Assembly (NCBI RefSeq): GCF_000143415.4
Contig: NW_003314339.1
Span: 117,751-181,750 of the forward strand
From: Selaginella moellendorffii
Lineage: Eukaryota; Plantae; Lycopodiophyta
DNA: 64,000 nucleotides
Direction: 5' to 3'
Shown: piece after piece, positions 2,251 through 6,375 of the stretch
How positions within the stretch are numbered: position 1 is the first letter of the stretch
Layout: every line of letters begins with the position of its first letter
Position numbers and translations under genes: made by a program
Notes under the pieces: generated by a model
Databases searched by the model: none
Seen by the model: only the letters and a program-made list of their open reading frames with translations
What the model was told of the DNA's origin: nothing

Positions 2251-2566
2251 GGTGGCTTGGTAGCATATATTTCTAGAACACAAGGAAAAGAAGGAAAGAG
2301 CAAAGTTATGGTAGGACCACAAGACATATTCACTCCGTGAGCAGAGAGGTGTCAAACAAAAACACACTTTTTTTGTTTGGTTTTTATTGGCATGGTCTAT
2401 AAAAAGTCAATGATGATTCTTAAGTTTTATCCATTCCTTTTTTATTTAAATTTATTATTTTTATATTTCTGAACCTTGTTCCTCATTTTGTATTGATTAA
2501 TAATTGGTTGACTATTATTAGTAATTTATCTTAATATGTTTAAATTATCATTCAATCTTTGTGAAG

Positions 2567-3445
2567 ATGAAGTTCATTTCAGCACTTCTTTTCTTTTTTA
2601 GTGTTGTTCAAGCCATGCGCTGGGAATTCTCTGACCAGCACAATGCTATAACGCTAGCCGATGTCACTATGATTCTAGATGCAGTGATTGAAAATCTGAG
2701 CATTTTCGACGACAATACTTACTATGAGAGTGGGGCAGCTTATATTGATCAAATCACTGTGACAAATAACGTTGTGATCGACATCGTCATCTTGGCTTAT
2801 CATACAGGCCCGAATCTGGATTTCTGCCATGTCAATCCAGGTAACACCATCAGAGTGAGAGGCTTTATTATCAAACTGATAATCCAAAACCTAGTAATGT
2901 ATACAAGAGGTCAAATGCAAGCCTTTCTAGCTAGCAGCATGCTTGCAGTCTCTGAGATGTTTGGAGTCCAATATCGCATAGCACCAAATCAACAGATGGA
3001 AACACTTCACAACCAAACGAAGATTCTATTTGAAAGCGATCGAGGCGATTGCCAAGCAAAATTGACAACGCTGGACAACATCTTCTATAATGGTCTTCAT
3101 CGAAATTTTGAGCTCCAGGCCCCGAATTTGATCTACACATTCAAGCTCCAGGATGATTGTAGCTTGTCTTTGAATGAGGCCAGCCGGGGGCAAGTTTGGA
3201 CGAATGGAGTGTGTGGGAGAGGAGGAGTCGATTGCTATCTCACAGTCGAACTTAATGGGAACATGGTCGTCAAAGAAACCCCAAGTCAGGCTGTTATATG
3301 GTCGCTAGATAGGTTCTGTGATGGACCATGCTATGCATTTGTGACTATGCAAAGAGATAGAAATGTGGTGCTCTATCATGTGTTTAAGTCCAGCCCAGGT
3401 AACCTTTATGCTGCTTGGGCCACGAATACTGTGAAAATTTTTTAA
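2567..3445 (+). CDS. Intronless secreted protein: unknown N-terminal domain plus C-terminal bulb-type (GNA/B-type) mannose-binding lectin domain
   Basis: Signal peptide MKFISALLFFFSVVQA. C-terminal ~110 aa with three lectin subdomains (LQDDCSLSL, VELNGNMVV, MQRDRNVVLY = QxDxNxVxY) ending AAWATNT. Confidence 0.8.
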   Translation: MKFISALLFFFSVVQAMRWEFSDQHNAITLADVTMILDAVIENLSIFDDNTYYESGAAYIDQITVTNNVVIDIVILAYHTGPNLDFCHVNPGNTIRVRGFIIKLIIQNLVMYTRGQMQAFLASSMLAVSEMFGVQYRIAPNQQMETLHNQTKILFESDRGDCQAKLTTLDNIFYNGLHRNFELQAPNLIYTFKLQDDCSLSLNEASRGQVWTNGVCGRGGVDCYLTVELNGNMVVKETPSQAVIWSLDRFCDGPCYAFVTMQRDRNVVLYHVFKSSPGNLYAAWATNTVKIF

Positions 3446-3782
3446 AATAAAAGACGGCACAAAAGAACGAAGATTTTCATTTAAAAGGTGCTTAGGTCGT
3501 GATCGATCCTATAATCTAGCTTGCGATGGGATTCGCTATGGAAGATTAGCCATTGCTGTATCTTTCATTAATTTCCTCTTTCCAAAATAAACCCCTCGCC
3601 CTCGCGAATATTGTGTGGTTCTACCTAGTTTGGGACGATGGCATGGGCCGGGCCACAATCCAAACAGCCACATTGTACGGTCACTGTCAGGGGGAGGGAA
3701 GAAGAGGCGAAGAAGACGAACAAGTGAGAGCTATGAGATTTTGGATTTAGGGCTCCCGGAGATAAGAGGAGGGAGGAGGGCA

Positions 3783-5440
3783 ATGGCGCAGCAGGGAGGC
3801 GCTGGCGAAATGTCGCCAGTCCAGTTCCGGGAGCTGGACGACGAATTCATGCAGGTAGATTCTTGACATTGTCGCTCGAGTCGATCGATTGAATGCCCCG
3901 AGTGAAATATTTCCATGGATTGGCTTTGGCACTCGCAGAAGCAAGCGAAGGTATGGCTAGAAGCTCTTTTGGAGGAACGATATGGTGGAGATCGGAGCTT
4001 GGCGGATTTGCTCGCCGATGGAGACATCCTGTGAGTCAATCTGAAAATCCGAATTGGACGAATGTGTCTCCTCCAAGAAATTTATTTATTTTTTACCTCT
4101 TTCCAGGTTTCGAGTTTCCAAGCTGTTCAAGGATCTTATACGAAGCAGCTCTGGAGGGGATGCCGCATTTCCAAGGCGGCCTTCCTCGGAGCTACCATCA
4201 AACGATGCAAAGGGTGGACGATATCTCCCATACTCTCACGTTGATTCATTCCTCAAGGCAAGCAATTTTTGTTTCTCGAGCTAGATATATGTTCCCACTT
4301 GCGTTTGCACAGATTTGCAAGAGAATAGGCCTGCCCGATGTTGATCTCTTCACTCCTCCGGATGTTGTGGAGAAGAAGGATATCAGAAGGGTCTGCTTTT
4401 GCATTCGAGCTCTCTCCAAAAAGGCTCGCGCTCAAAGTCTGCCGGTGAGAAGAAGAAAAGAAAACCGGAAGAAAGCTAAGCGTGTGGTGTGATGTTTCAG
4501 GTTCCAGATTTTGATAAGGTAGCTCACGCAGGTCCCATGCCACCGACGGACAAAGTTGGAGGTATCCGAGAGCATTTGCAACAAGCAGCGGTGGCGAGCT
4601 CCTCTCCAGACTACAAGTCTCCACGGGTACGAGATTTCTGTTCACCTTCCTTGCTACAATAAAAACGAAAAGACTGCTTGCTGTGCAGACTTCTCAGCCG
4701 ATTGGCAAAGTTCTATCGTCTCCGAGTCTCGCCGGCTCGGCCTTTATGGAAACGCCACCCTCGATCAAGCAGCAGGAAAGCGGGACTCCCGTAGAGCTCC
4801 AGCAGCAGGAAAGCGGGACTCCTGTAAAGTTCGAGGACGAAACCGCATCTTCAGAGCTTCAAGATGAGGAAGATAAGCAGTCAATCTCAGTATTGTCATC
4901 GCAAGTGGGCGAAACTGAGGATGACGAAGATGATAACAATCCCAAGCTTGTGGACGAGGAGAGATTTGGTGATCGCGCGCCGCCGCAAGTCAAGGATCAA
5001 CAATGCTGCTCCGCCCAGGTATGTACTTTAGAAAAACTATTCCCAGGTGGAAAGAGGTTTCTTAAAATCTCTCTTTTTGTCTCTTTCATCACAGGCAAAA
5101 GAGAAAGAGCCGCCGAGTTGCGTGCAGCGAAATGGAAGTACTGGGTTTGTTCTTCCTTTGGTGATTGGAGCAGTGGCACTGGTCGTGAGTGTTCTGGCAG
5201 TGGTAGCAGTCAAGCGGCCGAGGTACTAAAAACTTTCTAGTTTTCGCGACTCTTTCTCTAAGTTTGCTGTTCTTGGCCAGGAAAACTCGCGGCTACTATG
5301 TCGTCAAAGAGGGTGATACTCTGGCCAAAATCTCCCGGACCTGTGGAACTGGGCGCTGGACGGAGCTCGTGGACAAGAATCCGGGCCTGGCATCAAACCC
5401 GGATCTCATCTACCCCACTGACAGACTCAAGCTAGCGTAG
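3783..5440 (+). CDS. Calponin-homology domain / acidic linker / single TM helix / C-terminal LysM protein (8 exons)
   Basis: Exons 3783-3854, 3939-4030, 4107-4257 (GC donor), 4313-4444, 4501-4626, 4689-5018, 5095-5222 and 5281-5440 splice in frame. CH motifs: VWLEALL..LADLLADGDIL..VDSFLKICKRIGLPDVDLFTPPDVVEKKDIRRVCFCIRAL. TM: FVLPLVIGAVALVVSVLAVVAV. LysM: YVVKEGDTLAKISRTCGTGRWTELVDKNPGLASNPDLIYPTDRLKL*. Confidence 0.85.
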
Positions 5441-5683
5441 AAACATCATCGACGAAAGAGAAGTCAGTCCTTTTCATTCTTTCAAGCTTAAATCTGTGTT
5501 TGTTTTTCCAGTGTGATTCATCCTAGAACCCGAAAAACTAGAGCTGGAGTGGATCGATCGATCGACCACCAATACAGGAATAAGAACCGAGAGAGGAAAA
5601 AGAAAAGGAAAGGAGAAGAACAGTATGAATGAGCTGTGGGTGTCAAACTTCACCTCGTGTGTTCTTCGCTAAACTTCTTTCTT

Positions 5684-6186
5684 TCACTCCTTTTTGGGCG
5701 TCTTGTTGATGAGCGACTTGTGGATGTGAGGAATCACTCCTCCTCCCGCGATGGTGCCTTTGATTAGCGCGTCCAGCTCCTCGTCTCCACGAATCGCGAG
5801 CTGGAGATGCCTGGGAGTGATGCGCTTCACCTTGAGATCTTTGCTCGCATTCCCAGCCAGCTCCAGCACCTCGGCCGTGAGGTACTCTAGAATCGCTGCC
5901 GAGTAGACCGCCGCTGTCGCTCCCACTCTCCCGTTGGCCGCCACGCGCGTCTTGAGCATACGATGGATCCTCCCCACTGGGAACTGCGAAGAACACAGCC
6001 AAGCGCGTGTGAGAGAGAAAGAAAGAAGAAATCGATCGAAATTTTGGAATCGCGGCACAGATTTCGATCGCTACACACCTGGAGGCCGGCCTTGGAAGAT
6101 CGAGACATGGGCTTCTTCTTGGAATCCTTGAGATCGAGCGCCGACTTGGCCGATAGCAGCCCCTTGGCGCCTTTCCCTCCCACCAT
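5684..6186 (-). CDS. H2A.Z: Histone H2A variant H2A.Z (2 exons: 6186-6079, 5983-5684)
   Basis: SRSSKAGLQ|[75 protein letters not shown] is diagnostic of H2A.Z. Confidence 0.97.
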
Positions 6187-6375
6187 TGTGTCTTCTTTCC
6201 ACAAACCCTAACCTTCCATCGCTCTAACGCGCTGGTTTAAATACCAGTCGTGTTCTTCAAAGAAAGCACGGAGGAAAGAAGGGCGAGGTTTCTTGGAGAG
6301 GAACGATCGACGCGGCGCCGCCTCATCGCGCTCTCAAATGCCGCCAGCGCGCCGCCGGTGATGGGATTGCGGAGA

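What the first reader, a model, noticed from the sequence alone, without database searches (positions are those of the whole stretch)
3783..5440. Calponin-homology / TM / LysM protein: a possible trans-membrane link between cytoskeleton and GlcNAc polymers (plastid peptidoglycan or chitin)
Seen: eight exons splice in frame into an N-terminal CH domain, an acidic linker, one hydrophobic helix followed by KRPRKTR, and a terminal LysM exon (5281-5440) that the ORF track misses. There is no signal peptide and no kinase domain. The LysM end (NPDLIYP) looks bacterial-style. Known: CH domains bind actin or microtubules; LysM binds peptidoglycan or chitin; mosses and lycophytes retain plastid peptidoglycan pathway genes; basic residues after a C-proximal TM are typical of organelle outer-membrane anchors. 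Inference: CH and LysM sit on opposite sides of a membrane. The protein could tether the plastid peptidoglycan layer to cytosolic actin (positioning or division), or act as a kinase-less chitin sensor coupled to the cytoskeleton. I know of no characterised protein with this architecture.
Basis: partly seen in the sequence, partly recalled or inferred. Interest (0 to 1): 0.8.

Follow-up and report, generated by a model that had tools for sequence, protein, structure and literature searches.

The report
Ancient plant actin-membrane-LysM linker protein
This is a real, expressed Selaginella gene for a one-pass membrane protein with an actin-type CH domain on one side and a bacterial-style sugar-binding LysM domain on the other; it is the early form of the maize OPAQUE10 family, and flowering plants have lost the LysM part.

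Summary
Eight exons (3783-5440, +) splice in frame into a 396-aa protein. All seven junctions, including 5222/5281, appear in intron-less transcript contigs from four studies. One correction: intron 3 is GC-AG.

The domains are confirmed:
- N-terminal GAS2/IQGAP-type CH domain, by family profile against PDB and by AF2 plus Foldseek.
- Acidic disordered linker.
- One conserved TM helix followed by KRPRKTR.
- Pfam LysM, closest to bacterial peptidoglycan- or chitin-binding LysMs.

The protein is Selaginella moellendorffii SELMODRAFT_446318; the database copy is the other allele. It is not an orphan. CH-TM-LysM occurs in Closterium, Mesotaenium, a liverwort, Sphagnum, lycophytes, ferns and an unnamed clade sister to angiosperms (probably gymnosperms). 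Angiosperm homologues are the OPAQUE10 proteins. They keep CH and TM, but a basic 46-56-aa tail ending VYPAEKLKF replaces LysM.

The only functional O10 paper is retracted, and it noted neither the CH domain nor the LysM domain. No paper found describes a CH+LysM protein.

The membrane and the ligand are unknown. I favour an endomembrane actin linker with a luminal LysM. The plastid-peptidoglycan tether is not excluded: LysM loss coincides with PBP loss. It is weakened because angiosperms with nine of ten PG genes lack LysM, and a different family, PPASP, tracks that pathway.

The scan noted the same architecture on another piece of this genome, probably the other haplotype (not checked).

The parts
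3783..3854 (+). Exon 1: start codon and residues 1-24, the N-terminal lead into the CH domain
   Evidence: Splice model; joint 3854/3939 in four runs; N-terminus aligns with homologues (consensus)
3939..4030 (+). Exon 2: CH domain, first helices (residues 25-55)
   Evidence: AF2 helices 20-35 and 45-69 with pLDDT above 90
4107..4257 (+). Exon 3: CH domain with a low-confidence insert loop (about residues 70-95); followed by a GC-AG intron
   Evidence: joint 4255/4311 with 2 ambiguous letters = 4257/4313; loop aligns with the insert of the GAS2 CH3 domain
4313..4444 (+). Exon 4: most conserved part of the CH domain (residues 106-149)
   Evidence: 135 library hits with this exon alone; 100% identity to P0001 residues 106-149; invariant columns
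4501..5145 (+). Exons 5, 6 and the start of 7 (introns 4627-4688 and 5019-5094 inside): acidic, disordered, fast-evolving linker, residues 150-318
   Evidence: 31 D/E against 16 K/R; pLDDT about 45-55; all 8 allelic amino-acid differences lie at residues 257-310
5146..5214 (+). Transmembrane helix, residues 319-341, in exon 7 (5095-5222); followed by KRPRKTR across the 5222/5281 junction
   Evidence: KD 2.94; AF2 helix 323-340; conserved W.P..AG..A..G pattern in the family consensus
5281..5440 (+). Exon 8: LysM domain (residues 347-395 = 5288-5434) and stop codon 5438-5440
   Evidence: Pfam LysM 29.1 bits and 23.9 bits in the full protein; Foldseek 7r1l CtCBM50 with GlcNAc3, 38% identity, rmsd 1.9; family tail profile against PDB, 6ve2_O E 4e-14; joint 5222/5281 in four runs
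3600..3782 (+). 5' leader covered by transcript contigs; holds short upstream ORFs
5441..5700 (+). 3' untranslated region covered by transcript contigs; converges on a histone H2A gene on the minus strand

Best explanation
The locus encodes the Selaginella member of an ancient streptophyte family of C-terminally anchored, single-pass membrane proteins, the OPAQUE10 family. Shown: the spliced mRNA; a GAS2/IQGAP-type (type 3) CH domain at the N-terminus; an acidic disordered linker; a sequence-conserved TM helix; a C-terminal LysM of bacterial type; the family's spread from Zygnematophyceae to seed plants; and replacement of LysM in angiosperms by a basic tail that keeps only the last-strand motif. 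Inferred: with no signal peptide and a folded 150-aa N-domain, the CH domain and linker stay in the cytosol, where the CH domain binds F-actin as its closest solved relatives GAS2-CH3 and IQGAP1 do. The helix inserts after or late in translation, placing the roughly 55-aa LysM tail on the non-cytosolic face. My preferred site is the ER or an ER-derived endomembrane. There the protein would work as an actin-to-membrane linker whose LysM holds a GlcNAc-containing glycan or a luminal partner. The membrane and the ligand are not determined.
For: Gene and splicing. CH: with Pfam CH passed by orthologues P0011, P0119 and P0123. LysM. Family membership: maize opaque endosperm10 E 1.5e-41, 48% identity over the N-domain, with many 'protein OPAQUE10' and 'CH domain-containing protein' names. 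Distribution: Closterium, Mesotaenium, Riccia, Sphagnum, Diphasiastrum, Adiantum, Ceratopteris. In all of these except Closterium sp. NIES-65, a TM lies 8-25 residues before LysM. The tree places an unnamed LysM-bearing clade sister to LysM-less angiosperms with SH-aLRT 98. For an endomembrane site: the Selaginella helix is very hydrophobic (KD 2.94). Four relatives (P0056, P0087, P0002, P0115) carry 96-266 residues beyond the TM, which needs a protein-conducting channel of the ER type. The maize o10 mutant phenotype concerns ER-derived protein bodies, and the authors reported TM-dependent membrane and ER-associated localisation (PMC4991801; that paper is retracted).
Against: No topology or localisation data exist for any LysM-bearing member. 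The only localisation study of the family is retracted, and it describes 'unknown spherical vesicles' rather than a clear ER pattern. The residues just after the helix are strongly basic: +6 in Selaginella, and a net +8 median for whole angiosperm tails. In tail-anchored proteins, basic tails usually favour organelle outer membranes over the ER (my own knowledge of plant TA targeting, not tested here). The 55-aa tail is longer than in classical tail-anchored proteins. No ER-luminal LysM ligand is known. Single CH domains do not always bind actin.
Confidence: 0.45

Rival explanations
1. Plastid peptidoglycan tether. The protein is tail-anchored in the chloroplast outer envelope. LysM sits in the intermembrane space and binds the plastid peptidoglycan layer, and the CH domain binds cytosolic actin. 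This would couple the wall-bearing plastid to the cytoskeleton for positioning or division.
For: LysM is kept in exactly the lineages with evidence for plastid PG and a PBP gene. These are Closterium (antibiotic-sensitive plastid division, PMC3398972), mosses and Selaginella (PBP listed in Table S5 of PMC4815162), ferns (PMC9434261 abstract), and probably gymnosperms (tree; the title of Lin et al. 2017 cited). LysM is lost in all angiosperms, which lack PBP. Basic residues follow the TM. The LysM is closest to bacterial PG-binding LysMs of the TsaP, LytE and SafA types rather than to plant receptor LysMs. An outer-envelope TM-LysM protein has been proposed before for PPASP.
Against: The co-loss is a single evolutionary event at the angiosperm stem, so the correlation has n=1. 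Angiosperms that keep 9 of 10 PG genes (Mimulus/Erythranthe, Vitis) have LysM-less O10 homologues. PPASP, a different gene (Selaginella JGI 438100/438219, against 446318 here), follows the pathway through repeated losses. One study reports a PG layer in angiosperm chloroplasts (PMC9954125). Relatives with 96-266 residues beyond the TM are hard to pass across an outer envelope without a translocon. The very hydrophobic helix fits the ER better. No localisation data exist.
Confidence: 0.18
2. Cell-surface glycan sensor or anchor. After ER insertion the protein travels to the plasma membrane. LysM faces the apoplast and binds chitin or peptidoglycan fragments (or a wall glycan), and the CH domain couples that site to cortical actin. 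This is a kinase-less counterpart of LysM receptors.
For: The LysM fold matches a chitin-oligomer complex (7r1l) and fungal Ecp6. Single-pass topology with the cytosolic domain N-terminal follows. Tail-anchored proteins can reach the plasma membrane (my own knowledge).
Against: There is one LysM only, not the three-LysM ectodomain of plant receptors. LysM sits only 8-15 residues from the membrane, which is poor reach into the wall. Plant receptor LysMs are not among the best PDB matches. The angiosperm descendants lost LysM while LysM-receptor immunity persisted.
Confidence: 0.12
3. LysM stays on the cytosolic side. The hydrophobic segment would be a hairpin or monotopic anchor, or the protein sits on an organelle surface with both ends in the cytosol. 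LysM would then serve as a protein-interaction or small-ligand module, like the non-secretory plant LysMn proteins or the cytoplasmic bacterial Kbp.
For: Positive charge is higher on the C-flank than on the N-flank in Selaginella (+6 against +1), which by the positive-inside rule favours a cytosolic C-flank. Kbp, a cytoplasmic BON-LysM protein, is among the close PDB matches. Plants have intracellular LysM proteins (PMC2728734). The angiosperm tail of net +8 is hard to translocate.
Against: The hydrophobic stretch is a single uninterrupted helix of about 20-23 residues, too short for a hairpin. Its strict placement between CH and LysM in all members suggests a true separation.
Confidence: 0.12

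Closest known systems
Maize OPAQUE10 (opaque endosperm10) and 'protein OPAQUE10-like' / 'CH domain-containing protein' of angiosperms
   Same: Homologous N-terminal CH domain (E 1.5e-41, 48% identity). Variable disordered middle. Conserved C-terminal TM with the AG..x..G pattern. Post-TM tail of the same length class (46-56 aa against 49-66 aa in the LysM forms), ending in the [IV]YP..[KR]L.[LF] motif.
   Different: Angiosperm proteins are longer (about 500-1200 aa). Cereal O10 has lineage-specific repeats. The tail has no LysM by Pfam or by the family HMM and is strongly basic (net +8 median). The only functional paper (PMC4991801) is retracted. It called O10 cereal-specific with a TM of independent origin, which the family distribution found here contradicts.
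GAS2 CH3 and IQGAP1/Rng2 calponin-homology domains (type 3 single CH)
   Same: Best sequence-profile and fold matches for residues about 20-150. The insert loop aligns with that of GAS2. GAS2-CH3 has been solved bound to F-actin (9kbx title).
   Different: There is no GAR, IQ or RasGAP domain. Here the CH domain is joined to a membrane anchor. Actin binding was not tested.
Bacterial LysM/CBM50 modules (TsaP-like 6ve2_O, SafA/CtCBM50 7r1l, LytE, Kbp)
   Same: Same beta-alpha-alpha-beta module and the same motif series: GDTL..IS, W.EL, NP.I.NP.LIYP. E 4e-14 to 6ve2_O. 38% identity and rmsd 1.9 A to a GlcNAc3 complex.
   Different: Eukaryotic, intron-containing gene. A single copy placed 8-15 residues after a TM helix at the extreme C-terminus. 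Ligand unknown.
PPASP, the peptidoglycan-pathway-associated streptophyte protein (van Baren et al. 2016, PMC4815162)
   Same: A TM helix followed by a C-terminal LysM. No transit peptide. Streptophyte-specific. Proposed outer-envelope PG binder.
   Different: A different gene in Selaginella (438100/438219 against 446318). In PPASP the TM is N-terminal and there is no CH domain. PPASP persists in angiosperms that keep most PG genes. Sequence relatedness of the two TM-LysM modules could not be tested (one search found nothing).
Nesprin and calmin (CH domains plus a C-terminal membrane anchor) and plant CHUP1 (actin-binding chloroplast outer-envelope protein)
   Same: Same logic: a cytosolic actin-binding module tied to an organelle membrane by a terminal anchor. 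This is a functional analogy from my own knowledge.
   Different: No sequence relation was shown. Nesprins have tandem CH domains and a KASH peptide. CHUP1 is N-terminally anchored and has no CH or LysM domain.

Membership tests
Calponin-homology domain (Pfam PF00307) | Sequence match to the CH profile at or above the gathering score | tested here: inconclusive
   P0001 itself gives no CH hit at E<=0.01, and neither do the exon fragments. Orthologues pass: P0011 35.6 bits, P0119 34.2, P0123 26.6, against a cut-off of 26. Diphasiastrum P0136 has PF00307 precomputed.
Calponin-homology domain (Pfam PF00307) | CH fold (four main helices) and profile-level homology to solved CH domains | tested here: met
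   Family profile against PDB: GAS2 CH3 E 1.8e-9; IQGAP1 and Rng2 about 1e-4. AF2 pLDDT above 90 for about residues 20-150. Foldseek top 12 hits are all CH domains, probability 1.00.
LysM / CBM50 (Pfam PF01476) | Match at or above the gathering score (20.9 bits) and a beta-alpha-alpha-beta fold | tested here: met
   29.1 bits for exon 8 and 23.9 bits in the full protein. AF2 gives E349-351, H358-365, H370-376, E392-394. Foldseek 7r1l TM 0.72, rmsd 1.9.
LysM / CBM50 (Pfam PF01476) | Binding of GlcNAc-containing glycans (peptidoglycan or chitin) | not testable with these tools
   Only sequence and fold similarity to ligand-bound LysMs is available.
OPAQUE10 family | Homologous N-terminal domain plus a C-terminal TM near the end of the protein | tested here: met
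   names, E-values; N-domain HMM coverage; TM position; tree.
OPAQUE10 family | Central repeat region of cereal O10 | tested here: not met
   The Selaginella linker is 169 aa with no homology to O10 outside the N-domain; BLASTP coverage is 42% of the query. The repeats are cereal-specific according to PMC4991801. They are a lineage feature, not a family-wide one.
Tail-anchored membrane proteins | No signal peptide; a single TM within about 30-40 residues of the C-terminus; post-translational insertion | tested here: inconclusive
   No signal peptide and a single TM. But 55 residues follow the helix, and 96-266 in four relatives. The insertion route is not testable here.
Plant LysM receptors (LYK, LYR, LYP/CEBiP) | Signal peptide, three-LysM ectodomain, then a TM plus kinase or a GPI anchor | tested here: not met
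   No signal peptide, one LysM, no kinase domain. Plant receptor ectodomains are absent from the PDB matches at E<=1e-3.
PPASP (van Baren 2016) | N-terminal TM plus C-terminal LysM bi-domain protein; Selaginella genes 438100/438219 | tested here: not met
   This gene is SELMODRAFT_446318. The TM is preceded by 318 residues that include a CH domain.

The most novel reading that the evidence does not exclude
The CH-TM-LysM protein is the missing outside-in connector of the walled plastid. Anchored in the chloroplast outer envelope, its LysM grips the cross-linked plastid peptidoglycan and its CH domain grips actin. When angiosperms lost PBP and the cross-linked sacculus, the LysM decayed to a basic tail and the protein (O10) was freed for other membrane-actin tasks. 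A related possibility: TM-LysM is a shuffled C-terminal module that streptophytes attached to several cytosolic heads (CH here, C2 in another Selaginella gene, none in PPASP) to reach the same glycan.
Probability: 0.15. Interest if true: 0.85.

Novelty: new variant of a known kind. Interest (0 to 1): 0.58.

Why it matters
Three things follow if the reading holds.

1. It redefines the OPAQUE10 family. O10 would not be a recent cereal chimera. It would descend from a protein at least as old as the common ancestor of Zygnematophyceae and land plants, with a recognisable actin-type CH head, a conserved membrane helix and a LysM tail. That gives a concrete, testable mechanism (an actin-membrane linker) for a classic maize mutant whose only functional paper was retracted.

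2. It is a clean case of a folded glycan-binding domain decaying to a short conserved motif at the angiosperm stem.

3. It gives a named candidate, testable in Physcomitrium or Marchantia, for how a GlcNAc polymer behind a membrane could be mechanically coupled to the cytoskeleton. Plastid peptidoglycan is the most exciting option. How the plastid wall communicates with the cytosolic division and positioning machinery is an open question.

Tried and rejected
- Pfam on single exon translations found LysM but no CH. The full Selaginella protein also misses Pfam CH at E<=0.01, so CH had to be shown by family profile and by fold.
- The spliced protein has no reference of its own. I recovered the database copy (P0001) with a library search using exon 4. 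P0001 differs from the window protein at 8 linker residues, and I used it as a stand-in.
- A word search with the C-terminal 85 residues (TM+LysM), meant to look for PPASP-like small relatives, found nothing. Two ESM Atlas look-ups gave no usable hits.
- I tried to name the organism behind the unnamed LysM-bearing clade (P0012, P0185-P0188; runs SRR8475417, SRR8475524, SRR8475527 and SRR8475530). A paper search on the accession prefixes found nothing. 'Gymnosperm' therefore rests only on the tree position.
- Literature searches for calponin + LysM (+ plant) and for opaque10 + calponin found no relevant paper.
- Rejected: LysM receptor kinase or LYP (no signal peptide, one LysM, no kinase).
- Rejected: PPASP (different gene).
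- Rejected: a KASH protein. The tail does not end in a KASH-type motif. This was judged by eye against my own knowledge of plant KASH termini, not by a tool.
- Rejected: a gene-prediction artefact that fuses two genes. A single transcript contig spans all exons, and the fusion is conserved across streptophytes.
Full report
**1. Gene and transcript**

Reading 3000-6200 and joining eight exons gives an open frame of 1191 nt, that is 396 residues plus a stop. The exons are 3783-3854, 3939-4030, 4107-4257, 4313-4444, 4501-4626, 4689-5018, 5095-5222 and 5281-5440. Six introns are GT-AG. Intron 3 has a GC donor in the usual AAG|GCAAG context.

The index search found 20 runs that hold the stretch or part of it. 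The 17 best hold 51-68% of the sampled words of 3600-5700, about the exon share of the stretch. Contigs from four runs of four studies were laid on the stretch.
- They skip exactly the seven introns.
- One 1811-nt contig covers all eight exons without a mismatch.

The runs are only guessed to be RNA. But precise loss of seven introns in four studies is what spliced mRNA gives. A second allele is visible in three runs. Its differences in exon 6 are mostly non-synonymous, and the two in CH exon 4 are synonymous.

**2. Identity**

A library search with exon 4 alone returned a 396-aa protein, P0001, 100% identical over residues 106-149. P0001 differs from the window protein at eight positions, all between residues 257 and 310. 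Its source name is Selaginella moellendorffii hypothetical protein SELMODRAFT_446318, listed in UniRef as 'LysM domain-containing protein'. So the window is S. moellendorffii and the database copy is the other haplotype.

**3. Domains**

*LysM.* Exon 8 scores 29.1 bits and the full protein 23.9 bits, against a cut-off of 20.9.

*CH.* Pfam does not call a CH domain in P0001. A profile of 35 family members does match solved CH domains: the GAS2 CH3 domain at E 1.8e-9, and IQGAP1 and Rng2 at about 1e-4. The AlphaFold2 model has pLDDT above 90 for about residues 20-150, except for an insert loop at about 70-95. It also shows a helix at 323-340 and a beta-alpha-alpha-beta unit at 349-394.

*Fold search.* Foldseek ranks the CH domains of IQGAP1, GAS2 (solved on F-actin), Rng2, transgelin and calponin first. 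For the tail it finds CtCBM50 bound to a GlcNAc trisaccharide, at 38% identity and rmsd 1.9 A. Orthologues from Closterium, Mesotaenium and a EukProt transcriptome pass both Pfam models.

*LysM type.* A profile of the post-TM tails finds bacterial LysMs best: TsaP-like 6ve2_O (E 4e-14), LytE, SafA/CBM50 and Kbp. No plant receptor ectodomain appears at E<=1e-3.

*Other features.* The linker 150-318 is acidic (31 D/E, 16 K/R) and predicted disordered. The helix FVLPLVIGAVALVVSVLAVVAV is very hydrophobic (KD 2.94) and is followed by KRPRKTR.

**4. The family**

Homologues with the same CH-TM-LysM order occur in:
- Diphasiastrum, Adiantum and Ceratopteris;
- the liverwort Riccia, Sphagnum, two Closterium strains and Mesotaenium;
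- many unnamed transcript assemblies.

The angiosperm homologues are named 'protein OPAQUE10', 'opaque endosperm10 [Zea mays]' or 'Calponin-homology (CH) domain-containing protein'. A family LysM HMM finds the domain in all non-angiosperm lineages and in no angiosperm, not even Nymphaea.

A maximum-likelihood tree of the N-domain gives this nesting:
- mosses;
- lycophytes;
- ferns;
- an unnamed LysM-bearing clade of 758-787-aa proteins (P0012, P0185-P0188), sister to the angiosperms with SH-aLRT 98;
- the angiosperms themselves, a LysM-less clade with SH-aLRT 99.

I read the unnamed clade as gymnosperms, but I could not verify it. A fern paralogue clade (P0010, P0210, P0013) has separately lost or degraded LysM.

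**5. What angiosperms kept**

After the TM, angiosperm proteins have a tail of 46-56 residues, median 51. The LysM forms have a median of 54. The angiosperm tail has a net charge of +4 to +11, median +8, and ends in VYPAEKLKF-like sequence. Y and P are invariant in 36 sequences.

A profile-profile comparison aligns the last 15 columns of the LysM tails (NPDLIYPSERLxL) with the last 15 of the angiosperm tails, at probability 76% and E 2.3e-5. Together with the identical position, this makes the motif a probable remnant of the last LysM strand. I rate that as likely, not proven.

**6. Topology argument**

In every member inspected, a hydrophobic helix lies between CH and LysM. It is usually 8-25 residues before LysM. 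In four proteins (P0056, P0087, P0002, P0115) 96-266 residues follow the helix, with LysM still at the C-terminus. The helix itself is conserved in sequence, with the pattern W.P..AG..A..G, which suggests specific packing in the membrane.

With no signal peptide and a folded N-domain, the simplest topology is N-terminus in the cytosol and C-terminus out. This is inference, and nothing here tests it. One point against: the C-flank is more basic than the N-flank in Selaginella, +6 against +1.

**7. Which membrane?**

*For the ER or endomembranes.*
- The helix is very hydrophobic.
- The relatives with long post-TM segments need a translocon.
- The maize o10 phenotype concerns ER-derived protein bodies.
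- The O10 paper reports TM-dependent membrane association.

However, that paper describes 'unknown spherical vesicles' near the nucleus, and it was retracted in 2022 for figure and data problems. It used the Selaginella homologue as an outgroup. It did not recognise CH or LysM. It argued that O10 is cereal-specific with a TM of separate origin, and sections 4-5 contradict that.

- LysM is retained exactly where plastid PG and PBP are documented or inferred: Closterium (PMC3398972); mosses and Selaginella (Table S5 of PMC4815162); ferns (PMC9434261); gymnosperm gene retention (Lin et al. 2017 as cited).
- LysM is absent from angiosperms, which lack PBP.
- The post-TM residues are basic.
- The LysM is of the bacterial PG-binding type.

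*Against the plastid idea.*
- The co-loss is one event.
- Angiosperms with nine of ten PG genes (Erythranthe/Mimulus, Vitis) have LysM-less homologues.
- A different TM-LysM protein, PPASP, tracks the PG pathway through many independent losses and was already proposed as the envelope PG binder. Its Selaginella genes (438100/438219) are not this gene.
- One study reports PG in angiosperm chloroplasts.

My odds are:
| Reading | Odds |
|---|---|
| ER / endomembrane linker | about 0.45 |
| Plastid tether | about 0.18 |
| Cell-surface sensor | about 0.12 |
| LysM not translocated | about 0.12 |
| Other organelle | remainder |

**8. Comparison with the known, and novelty**

Each domain is a known kind, and the family has a name through O10. 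No paper in the searched library mentions CH together with LysM in a plant protein, or CH together with O10. The 2009 survey of plant LysM architectures lists C2+LysM and others, but the word 'calponin' does not occur in it.

What appears to be new:
- the CH-TM-LysM architecture;
- its age, back to Zygnematophyceae;
- its link to O10;
- the decay of LysM at the angiosperm stem.

I class it as a new variant of a known kind. An earlier scan note (s1-353506) reports a C2-like/TM/LysM gene in the same genome. With PPASP, that hints at a shuffled TM-LysM module. I did not test this.

**9. Limits**

- All structure and family work used P0001, the allele in the database, not the exact window protein. 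The two differ only in the linker.
- Taxon names come from source labels.
- Absence from Arabidopsis is only suggested: no Brassicaceae names appear, and there is a remark in the retracted paper.
- Statements about tail-anchor targeting rules, CHUP1, nesprin and KASH motifs are from my own knowledge.

Noticed in passing
window 5684-6200 (-): A histone H2A gene (Pfam Histone 60 bits plus Histone_H2A_C 41 bits), apparently with an intron, lies tail-to-tail with the CH-TM-LysM gene. The transcript contig of the latter runs past 5700 into it.
   Followed up: partly
window 2561-3445 (+): An intron-less 294-aa ORF with a hydrophobic N-terminus, probably a signal peptide, has no Pfam hit at E<=0.01. 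An earlier scan note, 34 kb before the window (s1-337476), speaks of an unrecognised secreted domain fused to a GNA-type lectin. This ORF may be a relative.
   Followed up: partly
window 3600-3782 (+): The 5' leader of the mRNA holds short upstream ATG ORFs, for example 3638-3727 (29 codons). They might regulate translation.
   Followed up: no
window 4871-4966 and 4342, 4357: Two expressed alleles are seen. Five of the seven listed exon 6 differences change the amino acid, all in the acidic linker. The two in CH exon 4 are synonymous. The linker evolves fast while CH, TM and LysM are held.
   Followed up: yes
P0010, P0210, P0013 (fern paralogue clade) and P0003 (Diphasiastrum): A second fern paralogue clade has lost or scrambled the LysM, independently of angiosperms (P0010, P0210), or ends right after the TM (P0013). 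P0003 is a short 280-aa form with no TM. These may be natural 'LysM-less' controls, or truncated gene models.
   Followed up: partly
P0002 and P0115 (Closterium sp. NIES-65 and an unnamed relative): These are long paralogues with several CH-like stretches, a TM-like segment and a LysM 230-270 residues further on. They are a different spacing of the same parts in zygnematophytes.
   Followed up: no
same genome, another piece (scan note s1-353506): A tail-anchored C2-like protein with a LysM beyond the membrane is noted in the same genome. With PPASP, it suggests a reusable TM-LysM C-terminal module in streptophytes.
   Followed up: no
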